NCBI GenBank assembly: GCA_038496445.1
Contig: JALMLS010000237.1
Span: forward strand, 39,304-103,303
DNA: 64,000 bases
Reading direction: 5' to 3'
Origin: Trichosphaerium sp. ATCC 40318
Taxonomy: Eukaryota > Protista > Tubulinea
Shown here: positions 1-61,696 of the stretch, piece by piece
How positions within the stretch are numbered: the first letter of the stretch is position 1
Layout: each line of letters opens with the position of its first letter
Notes under the pieces: generated by a model
The model's input: the letters and a program-made list of their open reading frames with translations, nothing else
Database searches by the model: none
Told to the model about the DNA's origin: nothing
Program-made: the position numbers and the translations under genes

Positions 1-439
1 TCTAGGTTGAGGAGCTAATTTACCAACCGAGTCCTAATGATGGAAATGTTATTTCTTAAAAACTCCGCTCAACGCATAGATTACTGAGACCAACGCTGTT
101 GAAAAGCTTACCCTCTGTTTAACATACTGTTTCCTACAATAAAAAAGATCGAGGTGAGTTTTATCACGTGACTATCGAGATAAAGTTGTAAATAAAAACC
201 GTACTTACCTTTGAGCTTTTACTGTATTTATCCATTCAAAAATACGCTTACATACGCCAAAAACCATTATGAGTAATGTAGCTCCTGCGAAAGCGATAAA
301 AATGAAATGGGCTTGTTAACAGTGTTAAAGGTTGTTTGATACTAATGGCGTTCAAACCTATGCGTTCTTCTCTTTCTCTTTCATCTCCTGTTGTGTTGGT
401 TGAGTTGTTGGAAGTGAAATTCGACGCTGGAGCTATCAT
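1..439 (-). CDS. 5' part of a spliced gene of unknown function, running off the window start
   Basis: ATG at 439 (MIAPASNF...NGFW), followed by GT-AG introns and micro-exons reading ..WLKAQ-RKQYVKQR-EITFPSLGL..; divergent from the CTD phosphatase gene. Confidence 0.55.
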
Positions 440-670
440 TTAAGCAAAAAATGGTTTCACATAAGTACTTGATATCGCAGTAATAAGCAAGCACTAAATA
501 GAAAAGAAAATCAGCCGGTACTTTTTTTATGGACCAAAATCGTATTATTATTTCCCGCCTTTGCTGTATACCAGCATACAGCCTTTGTAAATCCATTGGG
601 CCAAACGCAGGTCACTTAATAGTACCGCTTGGTAATAAGCCACTATTTTGTGTTTCTGGGCGCGAAACAG

Positions 671-3126
671 ATGACCAGCCGAAAACGAAAGGCTGACGTA
701 TTGAAGTCACCTGTAAAACGACTGCGACGCGATTCTGCTGCTAAAGACACCACAACAAGTTACCTTGGTTCTCCCATAGCTAGCATTAAAAGCCTACTAG
801 GATGGAAAGCTGACAAGGTAATTATTCTAATAATCTCTCCTACCCGTCGCCTTGTACTTTAGCTTGTTCAGTACATACAATACGACACCATGCGGCGTAT
901 TCTAACCGTTACAGCTTGCTGTTATTCTCAGCTATTTTACAGGCTATTAAATACCCCACAGTGAATTAAATTCGTACTAGGGACAAACAGACGGTAGAGA
1001 CGCAAAAAGGCTAAAAGTCACACCTAATTCACCATCGTTCATTACGAGCTCCCCACATAAAAGTCGTGCAAAACAAAAGTCCAAACCTTCACGCTCAGCG
1101 AGAAATTTAACGGCAGTATTTAACCAAGTGGCTGCTAGCGAGGCTGATGAGGCAATAGGAGAGGAGAATGCGGTACGTTTTAGGCGATTTTAAACGCATT
1201 AGTGGTCGCCTTCTGACAAAAAAAAAACCCATCAAATATTTTTATTGCGTCTATTTTACTCAATTTTTCGCTTCCCTACGCTCATAGATTGCAGTACTAT
1301 ACGTTTTTATTTTTTTCCCCTGATTTGACACAAACCGCTTTATTTTTTTTTTGCTTATGATTTTGCGAGTTTAGATCTCTGACGAAGCGACTGATACATA
1401 CTCAAGTATTATAGAAAGATTGTTTTCTCCTGTGCTAAAAGCATTTCAAGGCCCATCCGAATTATCAGGTACAATTTTTCGCGTGTACGCGCTAATGCTT
1501 ACGCGGATTTTTTGTAGAGACCTCTGAAGATGATAATAATGTATTACGCTCTCTAGAGTGTAAAGAGACCCTTCTTGATGAAGGGGAAGAAGTGATCGAG
1601 CAAGAAGAGGAAGAGGAAGAAGTTGAAGAATTCGATCCGTACGTCATTTGCGAGCTTCCGTACCTGCACTGCGCATGTTTTTTTTTGAATTAAATTAGTC
1701 AGAAACGTCAAAAAAAAGCGTTTGTAAATCAGAAAGTAGCCTGAAACGAGTTACCTTGTACTAACATTACTTGTAGATGGCTGTTTATGTATTCTTTACC
1801 AAAAAACCCTCCAAAACCGATTATTGGACCTGTTTTACCAAGGAAACGATGTAAAAAGAATACTCTAGTGTTAGATTTGGACGAAACCCTTGTACATTGT
1901 AGTTTAGACCCAGCCCGACGAGAGGGTTGTGACTTTGTATTAGATATCTTTATAGAAGAAGAAAAGTGCAACTACACCGTACGTGTTTTAAAAATTTTAG
2001 TTTGAAGAACATAAAACCAATATTTGGTCTAAAAGACTCTCAAACTATTTCGTGATTTTTCGACCAAACCAGTTTCAAAAATCTCGCCTTTACAAATGGA
2101 TACGGCCATACAACCATGAAAACTCCGTGTCTCTTTCCGAACCGCGAAGATAAGCATGGTATGGCCCTGCCAGTACTTGGGTCCGTGAGGACCAGGGAAC
2201 GTAGGGTGCTGTATTCATTTTGCTTCTTTTTTCCTTTTCGATTGTGCATGTGGACGCAGGCAGCGATATCGTCTCTTGTGTTTTTATTATGTAGTGTTAA
2301 TGTTCGATTTTTTAGGTATTTTGTTATGTACGACCGCACTTGTATGAATTTTTAAATGCTGTTGCGAATAAGTTCGAAATAGTTTTATTCACAGCATCCC
2401 AGCAGGTACGCTTTTTTTATCCAAAAAAACCTCATGAGAATCCATTAATATCCACAAAAGGGATACAAAGTTGGAGTGTCTCTTTTTCGTTCTCTGATTA
2501 TTTGTCATAAACCGACTGTTTTTTTTTATTTGTACTTACTTTTTTTAGGTCTATGCTGATGTTCTCCTTGATAAACTTGACCCAGATGGCAAATACTTTC
2601 ATCATAGATTATTCAGAGACTCTTGTGTAGTATGGCAAGGTAATTGTCTGAAGGACTTGCGTGTTCTGGGTCGTGATTTGTCAAAAGTTGTAATTGTAGA
2701 TAATTCACCTTATGTTTTTGGTTTTCAGGTACGCTTCTTCTCTAATCTCATTCAAGTGCTTGGTTGAGGCAAAAATGACCGCTGTGAGCCATGTTTGTAT
2801 ATTATAGATTGTGCAGCTCGCGCCTAGCAGTCCTTACAAACGCGAGGGTTGAATGAACTCTCAGTGCTTTTTTTTTTCTCGTGCTTCTCTTTTTGATAAA
2901 TGAAATTGTACTCATTGTTATGTTGTTTTAGGTTGATAATGGTATTCCTATCGAATCATATTTTGCAGAACCATCTGAAAAAGGAGATAATGAATTAATG
3001 AAGCTTGTACCATTTTTAAACAAAATTCAAAAAAGTAAGGAAGTTAGAGATGATGTACGTTCTACGTTCAAGTCATCTGAACGTATTGAAGAAGCAGGTA
3101 AACGACGAGCACGTATGTCGTCATAA
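671..3126 (+). CDS. CTD small phosphatase-like protein (FCP1/SCP HAD family, CTDSPL2-like), multi-exon
   Basis: Spliced translation has [12 protein letters not shown] (DxDxT), [47 protein letters not shown] and NGIPIESY; basic N-terminus; stop TAA at 3124-3126. Confidence 0.93.
2098..2216 (+). rRNA. 5S rRNA gene nested in intron 1979-2315 of the CTD phosphatase gene
   Basis: 119 nt, GGATACGGCCATAC...GGGTGCTGTATTC. Helix I GGAUACGGC/GCUGUAUUC, helix II ACCAUG/CAUGGU, loop C CCGAAC, box A-like AGATAAGC, loop E AGUA/GAA, helix V CCCUGC/GUAGGG, helix IV closed by a GUGA tetraloop; T-runs follow (Pol III terminator). Confidence 0.93.
2748..2877 (+). ncRNA. Candidate structured intronic RNA element of unknown family
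   Basis: Three hairpins with G-U pairs (favouring the + strand), ending in a T10 run, inside intron 2729-2931. Confidence 0.35.
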
Positions 3127-3239
3127 AAAACAAAGAAAAGAAGAAGAAGAAGCTTGATATCATGTCCACTACACCTTTTACCTTTTGTGTACTTGTAATA
3201 TAAAGAAGTTAACAATTTTTTTTTGGTTGTTTTTTTTAG

Positions 3240-3650
3240 CCGAATGTTTGCCTTGACACCTGCCAATGCCTTGATGCCGTGCTATTAATACAATACAATG
3301 TTTGTAGATAGTGTCTACAGCTCATTGTGAAGTAGGTCAGCTTCTCAGCGTTTGTATTCTCCCCATTTAAGCCGCAAATTGAATGCTTGACTTTTCTTCA
3401 AGAAGACAAAAGTACTGTTCATCGATAAACAAAATCAGATTTCTCACGGGTTTACTATGTGTGATCACAAAGCCATTACAGGTATTGTGTCGTTCGTAGG
3501 AGTATGTTAACATTAATGGTATACACGGGGATCTTATCTAAAGTGGAACTGTGGTTGCAACAGATACGACTGACATACTTTCAGAAAATTATGAGCCAAA
3601 GTAAACCACAACACTAAAACATATTGAAACCTGGAGATCATTGAACCAAC
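3240..3650 (-). pseudogene. Decayed F-box/LRR paralog relic
   Basis: Minus strand encodes GIKALAGVK (about 3255-3280) and VYTINV, matching the repeat unit of the 4380-5951 gene, interrupted by stops and frameshifts. Confidence 0.5.
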
Positions 3651-4379
3651 CGAATAAATACTTGTGAGTCTGTCGTCCTTGTACAATAATCCTAATTAGT
3701 ACAAGGTCCCACTCCGACAGCGATTGTTAATACAGTTTTGTCGTATTGGTTTATAAGATGCTATATCTGTCACGCAAGTGTAGAACAGACATCAGGCGAT
3801 AGATTTTTGTTGTTCGTATTTTCTTCTGTTCTAGTTCCTTTTTGACAAGTAGTTTAGCTATTGCATCATATGTATTTGAGCGAAAAAGAAACAACGCTCG
3901 TGGTAGAGACGGAAACTACCGTAAAACGTACCAGTAAGCGCTGTCTATCTCAATGCAGGTGTACTCCATCAGCATTCATAAGTTCGTTGCATTTCTTTGG
4001 TAGCCTTCCACGCTTCCCCAAGAGTACTAGAGCGTTACTCCAATCCGAGACTGCCTGTTTCATGACAGGTAACCACTTATCACCCTGCCGAAGACTATGA
4101 TGAGATGGCTTGGGCAGTATCCGCTACTGAGGCTATTTCCTATACGCCGCTTGAAGAGACAACACTTATCTGCAAAATAAACAGCTTCAGCAATTGTACA
4201 AACGTTCATTTGGTGCGATTCTGTGATTGTTGAACGTGTTGTGGCGTCGTGAACAGAAGTTTCAGTTTGTTCCCGACTTTTGGTCAAAGGTAGCGAAGCA
4301 TTTTATAAAAATAGGATTGTGTTCTAATTATATCTTAAGGTACCCTTAAGCCAGCCATTATTCTAACAAGTATACAAGA

Positions 4380-5951
4380 ATGAACTCAAACAGCGCTTTC
4401 TTTGATGAGATTCCAGTTGAAATCATTATTCATATTCTACAGTTTGCTTCCGTGCTATCTATTCGTTTAGTAGCGCGTACATCTAAATTACTATCCAGCG
4501 TTACCATACAACACTTGCTGTGTGATAATAGGAAAACTATACCGATAAATACAAGAAAAAAGCTTAGAACTCTATTCAAGACAGCTCCGTACCTTATAAA
4601 GAAACATACTCTTATCCTGAAATACTCTATCAAACAAAAAGACTTAAAGTACCTACAAGGTGTTTACGGTCTTAAATTGAAGGCGGAGTTGACAAACAAA
4701 GTTGATTTTAAACGCTTACAGGTGGTTGATTGTATTGACTTAACATGGTGTAGCAAAGTGACTAATGATCATCTTAAACAACTTGCTGGTATACATAAAA
4801 TTCTATTACGTTCTTCATATGTTACAGATGAAGGTGTGATTGCATTAGCTGGTGTTCATACAATTGCTATACGTGCCGCAAAAGTTACAGATGTTGGTGT
4901 TAAAGCATTAGCACTTGCTGGAGTTCATACGATTGATATTAGCAACTGTTATTTCGTTACAGATGCTGGTGTTAAAGCACTGGCACAAGCAGGTGTTCAT
5001 TCTATTTCTTTAAGGTTTTGTACTGTTACTGACAAAGGTATCAAAGCCTTGGCTGGAGTACATAAACTTAATCTCTCAGGCACAAAAGTTACAGATGATG
5101 GTATTAAATCATTGGCTGGTGTTCATACGATTGTACTAGACAATTGTGGGTCTATAACAGACGAAGGTGTAAAAGCGTTGGCTGGGGTTCATGCCATTGA
5201 TTTACTTGGGTGTAATGTAACAGATGACAGTATTAAGGCTCTTGCTGGTGTACACACAATTTATTTACGTGCTTGTATTCAGGTTACAGGTGATGGCATT
5301 AAAGCACTCGCTGGTGTTCACAAAATTAATCTGCGTGGTACTAAAGTTACAGATGAGGGTGTTGCAGCTTTAGCTGGTGTACATACAATTGATTTAAGTG
5401 GTTGTAGTACTATAACAGATACTGGCATTAAAACATTATGCGGTGTTCATTCCATTAATGTAAGTGGTTGCAATATTACAGACGAAGGCATTAAACCTTT
5501 AGCTGGTGTCCATACAATTAATTTAAATGGCTGCAATGTAACAGATGCTGGAATTAAAGCACTCTCTGGTGTCTATAAAATAGATATTGGTTACTGTGAT
5601 CAAATTACAGATGATGGTATTAAGGCATTAGCTGGTGTTCATGAAATTGGTTTACGTTGTTGTAGAGTTACAGATGACGGGGTTAAAGCATTAGCTGGTG
5701 TTTATTCGATTGACTTAACCAATTGTACAGGGTTAACAGATGAAGGTGTTAAAGCTTTAGCCGGTGTTCATAAAATAGAACTTATAGCATGTAATCAAAT
5801 TACTGATGATGGTGTGGCAGCATTGGCTGGCGTATATTCAATCAATGTACTGTATTGTGAACGTATTACCAAAAAGGGCATCAAAGCTTTAGGTGATGCT
5901 GATATTATAGGTAGAGAAGACTCTGAAAGGATATCATTGTTAAACTCATAA
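4380..5951 (+). CDS. Intronless F-box/leucine-rich repeat protein, 523 aa
   Basis: N-terminal F-box (FDEIPVEIIIHILQF..IRLVARTSK) and about 19 repeats of 21-24 aa, consensus GVHxIxLxxCxxVTDxGIKALA. Confidence 0.92.
   Translation: MNSNSAFFDEIPVEIIIHILQFASVLSIRLVARTSKLLSSVTIQHLLCDNRKTIPINTRKKLRTLFKTAPYLIKKHTLILKYSIKQKDLKYLQGVYGLKLKAELTNKVDFKRLQVVDCIDLTWCSKVTNDHLKQLAGIHKILLRSSYVTDEGVIALAGVHTIAIRAAKVTDVGVKALALAGVHTIDISNCYFVTDAGVKALAQAGVHSISLRFCTVTDKGIKALAGVHKLNLSGTKVTDDGIKSLAGVHTIVLDNCGSITDEGVKALAGVHAIDLLGCNVTDDSIKALAGVHTIYLRACIQVTGDGIKALAGVHKINLRGTKVTDEGVAALAGVHTIDLSGCSTITDTGIKTLCGVHSINVSGCNITDEGIKPLAGVHTINLNGCNVTDAGIKALSGVYKIDIGYCDQITDDGIKALAGVHEIGLRCCRVTDDGVKALAGVYSIDLTNCTGLTDEGVKALAGVHKIELIACNQITDDGVAALAGVYSINVLYCERITKKGIKALGDADIIGREDSERISLLNS

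Positions 5952-54357: not shown

Positions 54358-61696
<7,339 letters not shown>

What the first reader, a model, noticed from the sequence alone, without database searches (positions are those of the whole stretch)
1979..2315. Intact 5S rRNA gene nested, in sense, within an intron of a Pol II CTD-phosphatase gene
Seen: a 337-nt GT-AG intron interrupts the catalytic domain (NYT|VFCYVRPH) and holds a 119-nt 5S sequence (2098-2216). Its helices pair, internal control elements are recognisable and oligo-T follows, so it looks functional rather than decayed. Established: 5S genes are usually in tandem arrays, linked to rDNA or other repeats, or dispersed in intergenic DNA. Inference: an intron-hosted Pol III gene sharing a template with Pol II, or a 5S processed from the intron. 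The ends resemble Acanthamoeba and Dictyostelium 5S as I recall them.
Basis: partly seen in the sequence, partly recalled or inferred. Interest (0 to 1): 0.85.

Follow-up and report, generated by a model that had tools for sequence, protein, structure and literature searches.

The report
5S rRNA gene inside a spliced intron
A complete, normal-looking 5S ribosomal RNA gene sits, in the same direction as its host, inside a genuinely spliced intron of a phosphatase gene in an amoeba-like protist, and unchecked scan notes say the same layout recurs across this genome, which I did not find reported for 5S genes.

Summary
Observation confirmed. Rfam's 5S_rRNA model matches window 2098-2217 (+) end to end (93.7 bits, gathering score 38, E 5.6e-19). 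It is the only Rfam match in 64 kb and folds into the canonical three-way junction.

It lies in a 337-nt phase-0 GT-AG intron (1979-2315) of an 8-exon, 407-codon SCP/NIF-type phosphatase gene. Contigs of transcriptome-like public runs join 1978 to 2316, and they splice the six other introns too. One run also holds contigs that run exon-intron-5S-intron-exon, and this is the only intron of the gene covered by RNA contigs.

T4 follows the 5S end directly and T6 follows nine bases later. There is no poly(A) tail or target-site duplication.

Most likely (about 0.6) this is an autonomous Pol III 5S gene nested co-directionally in a Pol II gene. Maturation from the host intron (about 0.2) is not excluded.

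The scan found this before on other DNA of the same genome. At least eleven first-reader notes, not checked by me, describe sense-nested intronic 5S genes (UPF2, eIF4G, SMG7, SIN1, ABCE1, NMD3 and others), and none describes an antisense copy. I found no paper describing intron-hosted 5S genes. The closest parallels are intronic tRNA genes of C. elegans (only 56% sense) and the Yarrowia tRNA-5S fusions.

The parts
671..3126 (+). Host gene coding span: 8 exons (671-817, 981-1172, 1375-1468, 1518-1638, 1777-1978, 2316-2405, 2549-2728, 2932-3126), 1221 coding bases, 407 codons; SCP/NIF-type (FCP1-homology) phosphatase
   Evidence: Splice joints in contigs of four runs. All exons are open in the running phase. 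Pfam NIF is tiled by the last four exons. PDB matches to CTDSPL and SCP1.
1874..1888 (+). DLDET, the DxDx(T/V) catalytic motif of the phosphatase, in the exon just upstream of the 5S intron
   Evidence: Translation and alignment to CTDSPL chain 2hhl_A.
1979..2315 (+). Phase-0 GT-AG spliceosomal intron, 337 nt, the longest of the gene (217 nt without the 5S, like the other introns of 49-203 nt); if retained, a stop follows after 8 codons
   Evidence: Joint 1978->2316 in X1 and X4. Boundaries and phase. Stop on read-through. Unspliced contigs 1952-2225 and 2196-2345 in X4.
2098..2217 (+). 5S rRNA gene, complete, on the same strand as the host; 119 nt after the 5' splice site and 98 nt before the 3' splice site
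   Evidence: RF00001 at 93.7 bits, model 1-120 of 120. Canonical fold, z -3.6. X2 contig 2116-2225 and X4 contig 1952-2225 show no differences inside the 5S.
2218..2221 (+). T4 run directly after the 5S 3' end: candidate Pol III terminator
   Evidence: Sequence and T-run list. Inferred function only. Contigs run through it to 2225.
2227..2232 (+). T6 run: candidate back-up Pol III terminator
   Evidence: Another X4 contig follows the window to 2230 and then diverges, which suggests that the 3' flank up to about here is shared with another 5S locus (table 7; inference).
2072..2082 (+). GTTTCAAAAAT, an A/T-rich stretch at -26 to -16 from the 5S start; the only TATA-like candidate upstream, and not a canonical TATA box
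   Evidence: Sequence. A near-copy lies at 1985-1995. The strain differences in X4 (2042, 2085, 2092) fall outside it. Its function is a guess.
2094..2097 (+). AAAU, which can pair with AUUU (2217-2220) and lengthen helix I from 9 to 13 pairs in the intron or precursor context
   Evidence: Fold of the whole intron. This could be chance, because both sides are simple A/T sequence.

Best explanation
Window 2098-2217 is an intact member of this organism's dispersed 5S rRNA gene family. It is lodged, co-directionally, in a pre-existing intron of about 220 nt in an SCP/NIF-type phosphatase gene. Most likely it is an autonomous RNA polymerase III unit: it would use the type-1 internal control region inside the 5S sequence and terminate at the T4 or T6 runs just downstream. 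Meanwhile Pol II reads through the same DNA and the spliceosome removes the whole 337-nt intron from the host mRNA. Shown here: the 5S is complete and folds canonically; the intron is real and spliced; pre-mRNA-like RNA that carries the sense 5S joined to both flanking exons exists. Inferred: Pol III transcription; use of the T-runs as terminators; and the reason for the sense orientation. I take that reason to be selection against head-on Pol II/Pol III interference and against host pre-mRNAs carrying anti-5S sequence, in a genome whose intergenic spacers are very short and whose introns hold much of the non-coding DNA.
For: The 5S is full length at 93.7 bits, with a canonical fold, z -3.6. 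T4 begins at the first base after the 3' end and T6 lies nine bases on. There is no poly(A) tail or flanking direct repeat, so it does not look like a retro-copy. No differences from run contigs fall inside the 5S, while four fall in the intron flanks. The intron is spliced in X1 and X4, and all seven introns are GT-AG. Host contigs have modest depth and the host is a regulatory enzyme. Established knowledge says 5S is needed in equal numbers with the large rRNAs, a demand that introns of weakly expressed genes could hardly meet. In every eukaryote studied 5S is a Pol III product, including the Yarrowia tRNA-5S fusions (PMC2566860). An intronic Pol III unit lowered host expression when antisense but not when sense (PMC5358760), which gives a tested basis for a sense preference. 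A neighbour's transcript contigs end near 514 and the host ATG is at 671, so the spacer is only about 150 bp.
Against: No raw reads were available, so no 5' end, 5' triphosphate or Pol III occupancy could be seen. There is no canonical TATA box near -30, and only one copy was available, so conservation of flanks could not be tested. T-runs occur about once per 41 nt in this gene's introns, so the terminator could be chance (roughly 3-10%). Contigs in X2 and X4 run past T4 to 2225. By the scan's unchecked notes all reported copies are sense, which is the hallmark of intron-processed RNAs. Intronic tRNA genes of C. elegans, which are independent Pol III genes, are only 56% sense (PMC4999229).
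Confidence: 0.6

Rival explanations
1. The 5S is made, wholly or partly, from the host's Pol II transcript. The sense 5S folds within the intron, binds its proteins (the L5/uL18 type), and is released from the pre-mRNA or the excised intron by nucleases, as intronic snoRNAs are.
For: Sense orientation here and in every other 5S note of the scan for this genome (unchecked). One RNA per intron. No canonical TATA box upstream. The flanks can lengthen helix I by four pairs. RNA contigs link exon, intron and 5S at both intron ends, and only for this intron of the gene. Yarrowia shows that a 5S can be matured from a longer precursor (PMC2566860).
Against: T4 and T6 lie exactly where a Pol III terminator should be. 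The hosts named in the notes (phosphatase, UPF2, SMG7, SIN1 and others) are not the highly expressed kind of gene that hosts snoRNAs, and 5S demand is very large (established knowledge). No eukaryote is known to make 5S by Pol II. Unspliced contigs are what any retained intron would give.
Confidence: 0.2
2. This copy is a silent or recently disabled duplicate (a young pseudogene). It looks intact only because it is recent or is homogenised by gene conversion, and the working 5S genes lie elsewhere.
For: Expression of this particular copy cannot be told from that of its identical siblings. The X4 contig 1952-2225 is continuous with the exon, so it is pre-mRNA and not mature 5S. X1 and X3 have no 5S contigs. 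Mammalian genomes carry many dispersed 5S pseudogenes, some in or near genes (PMC3261910).
Against: No decay at all: 93.7 bits, full length, all helices formed. Mouse pseudogenes, by contrast, lose the fold. No difference inside the 5S against four in the intron flanks between strains (not significant alone, p about 0.17). The scan notes describe only intact intronic copies and no array in this genome (unchecked).
Confidence: 0.13
3. The intron was created by a mobile 5S-bearing element (an introner or a 5S-derived SINE carrying its own splice sites). That would force the sense orientation.
For: A strict sense orientation is what a splice-site-carrying element would give. 5S-derived SINEs exist in other eukaryotes (own knowledge).
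Against: No terminal direct or inverted repeats, target-site duplication or A-tail around the 5S or at the intron ends. Another 5S locus seen in X4 shares the window's 3' flank only to about 2230 and then diverges. The intronic 5S stretches in the scan notes vary in length (228-452 letters). Without the 5S this intron has the usual length for the gene.
Confidence: 0.05

Closest known systems
Intronic tRNA genes of Caenorhabditis elegans (Sagi et al. 2016, PMC4999229)
   Same: Complete Pol III genes with internal promoters sit inside introns of Pol II genes. In C. elegans 44% of 609 tRNA genes are intronic, and the host promoter affects their expression.
   Different: Those are tRNA genes, not 5S. 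Only 56% are in sense, and the intronic share matches chance. Here the gene is a 5S, and by the scan's unchecked notes all reported copies in this genome are in sense.
[quoted passage not shown] 2008, PMC2566860)
   Same: A dispersed 5S family in an unusual linkage. The 5S is matured from a longer transcript and does not need its own promoter factor TFIIIA.
   Different: The carrier transcript there is a Pol III tRNA transcript, not a Pol II pre-mRNA intron. No tRNA lies next to this 5S.
MIR element in the first intron of mammalian Polr3e (Yeganeh et al. 2017, PMC5358760)
   Same: An active Pol III unit nested in a Pol II intron. The two polymerases share a template, and orientation decides the effect on the host.
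   Different: That is an antisense SINE relic acting as a roadblock, not a functional rRNA gene. The 5S here is in sense, the orientation that had no measurable effect in that study.
Mammalian dispersed 5S pseudogenes and 5S transgenes (Fedoriw et al. 2012, PMC3261910)
   Same: 5S sequences located away from the array, including in an intron, can tether a locus to the nucleolus and dampen nearby Pol II genes.
   Different: Those copies are decayed and do not fold like 5S. This one is intact.
Intron-hosted box C/D and H/ACA snoRNAs
   Same: One small structured RNA per intron, always in sense, released after splicing. A scan note reports such snoRNAs in this genome (unchecked).
   Different: snoRNAs have no promoter or terminator of their own and usually sit in highly expressed hosts. 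This 5S is followed at once by T4 and T6.

Membership tests
5S ribosomal RNA (Rfam RF00001) | Covariance-model score at or above the curated gathering score, over the full model | tested here: met
   93.7 bits against 38, model 1-120 of 120, E 5.6e-19.
5S ribosomal RNA (Rfam RF00001) | Three-way junction with helix I closing the ends and the two arms (helices II-III and IV-V) | tested here: met
   The minimum-energy and centroid folds give this structure: -45.7 kcal/mol, z -3.6, 0 of 200 shuffles as good. The CM alignment flags only two non-canonical pairs.
5S ribosomal RNA (Rfam RF00001) | The RNA is made and is part of the large ribosomal subunit | tested here: inconclusive
   Contigs identical to the 5S occur in X2 (2116-2225) and X4 (1952-2225). 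Contigs cannot show ends, abundance or which copy was transcribed, and no ribosome-derived data were available.
Autonomous Pol III type-1 (5S) gene | Run of four or more T directly downstream as terminator | tested here: met
   T4 at 2218-2221 and T6 at 2227-2232. The weight is limited because T-runs occur about once per 41 nt in the introns of this gene.
Autonomous Pol III type-1 (5S) gene | Internal control region (A box, intermediate element, C box) bound by TFIIIA; Pol III occupancy; 5'-triphosphate transcript | not testable with these tools
   The region matches the Rfam consensus, but the same bases are constrained by RNA structure. No ChIP data or 5'-end chemistry were available.
Intron-processed small RNA (snoRNA-like biogenesis) | Sense orientation in an intron that is spliced from the host transcript | tested here: met
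   Same strand. Joint 1978->2316 in X1 and X4.
Intron-processed small RNA (snoRNA-like biogenesis) | No transcription signals of its own | tested here: inconclusive
   There is no canonical TATA box upstream, but T4 and T6 lie exactly at the 3' end, and a 5S promoter would be internal.
5S pseudogene or 5S-derived retroposon (SINE) | Decay or truncation of the 5S, an A-rich tail, target-site duplication | tested here: not met
   Full-length intact 5S. The 3' flank is T-rich, with no flanking direct repeats.
SCP/FCP1-homology (NIF) phosphatase (host gene) | NIF domain above Pfam's cut-off and the DxDx(T/V) catalytic motif | tested here: met
   Four exons hit PF03031 at 24.9, 28.8, 72.9 and 25.6 bits (cut-off 21.8), collinear over positions 2-160. 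DLDET aligns with CTDSPL. Best PDB matches are CTDSPL and SCP1.
SCP/FCP1-homology (NIF) phosphatase (host gene) | The substrate is the Pol II C-terminal domain | not testable with these tools
   The family also holds TIM50 and CTDNEP1, which score lower. The substrate needs an assay.

The most novel reading that the evidence does not exclude
In this amoeba-like protist the whole 5S rRNA gene family, and many tRNA genes, may have moved into spliceosomal introns, always in the host's direction. The 5S supply may then be coupled to Pol II transcription of the hosts. In the extreme case, 5S would be cut out of Pol II pre-mRNA introns as snoRNAs are. Many hosts named in the scan's notes act in translation, mRNA surveillance and growth control.
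Probability: 0.2. Interest if true: 0.9.

Novelty: new variant of a known kind. Interest (0 to 1): 0.62.

Why it matters
5S rRNA is the one ribosomal RNA made by Pol III. Its genes are known as tandem arrays, as parts of rDNA, spliced-leader, snRNA or histone repeats, or as dispersed intergenic copies. I found no paper describing functional 5S genes hosted in introns: a full-text search for 'intronic 5S' returned nothing.

If the genome-wide, sense-only pattern in the scan's notes holds, this organism is a natural test case for three questions. The first is how a very busy Pol III gene and a Pol II gene share one template. The second is whether orientation is set by polymerase collisions. The third is whether a eukaryote can draw 5S from Pol II introns.

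The pattern also offers a possible link between ribosome production and the expression of host genes in translation and mRNA surveillance. At this locus, the 5S-bearing intron is the only one of the gene seen unspliced in RNA contigs, and retaining it truncates the phosphatase after eight codons.

Tried and rejected
- **Metagenome search for further copies of this 5S.** Two exact-pattern scans of metagenome contigs were run. The first found nothing. The second gave one chance hit in a contig of about 60% G+C with no 5S.
- **Orthologous intron in relatives.** A representatives search with the exon upstream of the intron found no relative above 58% identity. The two best full-span hits sit on short, intronless metagenome contigs, so the test could not be made.
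- **Naming the organism.** A look-up of the 523-aa ORF at 4380-5948 found no record, and the run names are coded.
- **Retro-copy or introner origin.** No target-site duplication, terminal repeats or A-tail were found.
- **Bacterial-type promoter and terminator scan.** It found nothing and does not apply to a eukaryote.
- **Other small RNAs in the gene.** There are no tRNAs in the window. The only other Rfam match in 1-4000 is a sub-threshold SNORD24-like hit outside the gene.
- **Ranking spliced against unspliced forms by contig depth.** The tool warns against this. I report where the contigs lie and give depths only as a rough hint.
- None occurred, and I took no contig for human.

Full report
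**The observation**

The window holds exactly one match to any Rfam family at gathering threshold. It is 5S_rRNA at 2098-2217 on the + strand: 93.7 bits against a gathering score of 38, E 5.6e-19, model positions 1-120 of 120, with only two non-canonical pairs flagged. A more permissive scan of 1-4000 gives the same hit.

Folded alone, the 120 nt adopt the canonical three-way junction. Helix I has nine pairs closing the ends, and the two arms form as expected. The energy is -45.7 kcal/mol, z = -3.6, and none of 200 shuffles folds as well. This is not a chance resemblance or a decayed copy.

**The host gene**

Translations of the flanking stretches read ...[13 protein letters not shown]...EEEKCNYT before position 1979 and [12 protein letters not shown]... 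after 2315. The last four exons hit Pfam NIF (PF03031) at profile positions 2-29, 36-64, 66-124 and 126-160. They are collinear and each is above the curated cut-off.

The best solved relatives are CTDSPL and SCP1. TIM50 and CTDNEP1 score lower. The DLDET catalytic motif (1874-1888) aligns with that of CTDSPL. The host is therefore an SCP/FCP1-homology phosphatase. That its substrate is the Pol II CTD is a family-level inference.

With the splice joints, the gene has 8 exons: an ATG at 671, a stop at 3124-3126, and 1221 coding bases (407 codons). Every exon is open in the running phase, and there are seven GT-AG introns, six beginning GTAC and one GTAA.

**Is the intron real?**

Contigs of four public runs were laid on 300-3500. 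All seven introns appear as GT..AG skips. The 5S intron appears as 'from 1978 to 2316, skips 337' in X1 (88 letters on the shorter side) and X4 (27 letters).

The runs hold spliced contigs, so they contain cDNA, although their records do not state the library kind.

The intron is phase 0 and is the longest in the gene. Without the 5S it would be 217 nt, like its neighbours at 138-203 nt. That fits insertion of a 5S gene into an existing intron.

**RNA that carries the intron**

X4 also holds a contig lying on 1952-2225 (exon, 5' splice site, upstream intron and the whole 5S) and another on 2196-2345 (5S 3' part, downstream intron and next exon) (table 8).

No contig of any of the four runs lies in any other intron of the gene (tables 2 and 8). 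DNA contamination is therefore an unlikely source. This intron is present in RNA joined to both exons.

The contig depths are about 22 and 12 for the unspliced pieces, 17 for the spliced joint and 28-33 for the exons. They hint that a sizeable share of X4 transcripts retain the intron, but the tool warns that contig depths cannot rank parts of a gene. X1 shows only the spliced form. Retention would stop translation after eight codons.

The two X4 contigs overlap by exactly 30 bases (2196-2225), as neighbouring pieces of an assembly graph do at a branch. A further X4 contig follows the window to 2230 and then continues for 176 letters that differ (table 7). I infer that at least one other 5S locus shares the 5S and about 8-13 bases of trailer (TTTTGCTT...) and then differs.

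Inside the 5S no run shows any difference from the window. The intron flanks show four differences: 2042, 2085, 2092 and 2263 (table 3).

**Signals around the 5S**

T4 starts at the first base after the 3' end (2218-2221), T6 follows at 2227-2232, and another T4 lies at 2235. This is where a Pol III terminator belongs. However, this gene's introns carry 30 runs of T4 or longer in 1235 bases, so chance is not negligible.

Upstream there is no canonical TATA box. The only A/T-rich candidate is GTTTCAAAAAT at -26 to -16.

In the context of the intron, AAAU before the 5S can pair with AUUU after it, which lengthens helix I to 13 pairs. This may be chance.

There is no A-tail, target-site duplication or terminal repeat. 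A LINE-mediated retro-copy or a splice-site-bearing mobile element is therefore not supported.

**The wider genome**

The scan's index lists at least eleven first-reader notes on other pieces of the same genome that describe an intact 5S gene nested in sense in an intron. The hosts named are UPF2, eIF4G, SMG7/EST1-like, SIN1, ABCE1, NMD3, a kinase and three unnamed genes. Several notes also report sense-nested tRNA genes. No note of an antisense, intergenic or arrayed 5S surfaced.

These are unchecked AI notes with an obvious reporting bias, and I could not read those windows. I treat the pattern as a strong lead and not as evidence. My own attempts to get more copies or relatives failed.

**How it most likely works**

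I favour an autonomous Pol III gene (about 0.6), for four reasons:

- The terminator-like T-runs sit exactly at the 3' end.
- The copy is fully intact.
- The cell needs as many 5S molecules as large rRNAs, which introns of modestly expressed regulatory genes could hardly supply.
- All eukaryotes studied make 5S by Pol III, even Yarrowia, where 48 of 108 copies are read as tRNA-5S fusions without TFIIIA (PMC2566860).

A sense preference has a tested precedent. A Pol III unit placed in an intron lowered host expression when antisense but not when sense (PMC5358760). An antisense copy would also put anti-5S sequence into the host pre-mRNA.

Nesting as such may be close to chance in this compact genome. 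Here about 150 bp separate a neighbour's transcript contigs from the host ATG, and introns make up half of the gene. In C. elegans, 44% of tRNA genes are intronic, which equals chance expectation (PMC4999229).

The main rival (about 0.2) is maturation of 5S from the host's Pol II transcript, in the manner of a snoRNA. An all-sense pattern is its hallmark, whereas only 56% of intronic tRNAs are sense in C. elegans. The exon-intron-5S contigs are compatible with it but are not specific to it.

A silent young duplicate (about 0.13) and an introner-like origin (about 0.05) are less likely.

**Comparison and novelty**

Nested Pol III genes in Pol II introns are known: tRNA genes in nematodes and mammals, and SINEs. 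Decayed 5S pseudogenes in mammals can tether loci to the nucleolus (PMC3261910).

I found no report of intact 5S genes hosted in introns. 'Intronic 5S' returned no paper, and six other full-text searches returned none that describes it. A review of protist 5S arrangements (Drouin and Tsang 2012, listed in the references of PMC10161547) is outside the searchable library. To my recollection it lists linkage to rDNA, spliced-leader, snRNA and histone genes, not introns.

I rate this a new variant of a known kind. The locus itself is solid. Its importance depends on the genome-wide census and on 5'-end chemistry, neither of which I could run.

Noticed in passing
window 1-64000: The palindrome CACGTG occurs 52 times against 9.9 expected from shuffles (largest shuffle value 16). 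This agrees with other agents' notes of a genome-wide excess. None of the copies lies in the 5S intron.
   Followed up: partly
window 3788-3874 (-): Sub-threshold match to the box C/D snoRNA family SNORD24 (27.3 bits against a gathering score of 41, E 0.16), downstream of the phosphatase gene on the other strand.
   Followed up: no
window 60265-61659 (+): A 464-codon open frame with a weak Pfam hit to the Rpb1 C-terminal heptad repeat (PF05001, E 1.7e-4). It is possibly the tail of the Pol II largest subunit, in the same window as an SCP-type phosphatase gene.
   Followed up: no
window 1371-1408: In X1 and X4 a deeper contig (word depth up to 77) shares only about 38 bases with the start of exon 3, carries one extra A after 1384, and continues with unrelated sequence on both sides. 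It is probably another transcript that shares a short stretch.
   Followed up: no
window 300-514: Contigs of X1 and X2 cover a neighbouring transcript that ends about 150 bp before the phosphatase ATG at 671, so the spacer between the two genes is very short.
   Followed up: no
window 2296-2302 and the other intron 3' ends: Six introns of the gene carry a CTNAY-like branch-site candidate (for example TACTAAC at 1759-1765) shortly before the AG. The 5S intron has only GTTAATG. A weaker branch site could contribute to its retention in X4.
   Followed up: no
window 4380-5951 (+): An intron-free 523-codon open frame made of leucine-rich repeats (Pfam LRR_6, E 3e-43). No identical product is on record in the contig collection.
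   Followed up: partly
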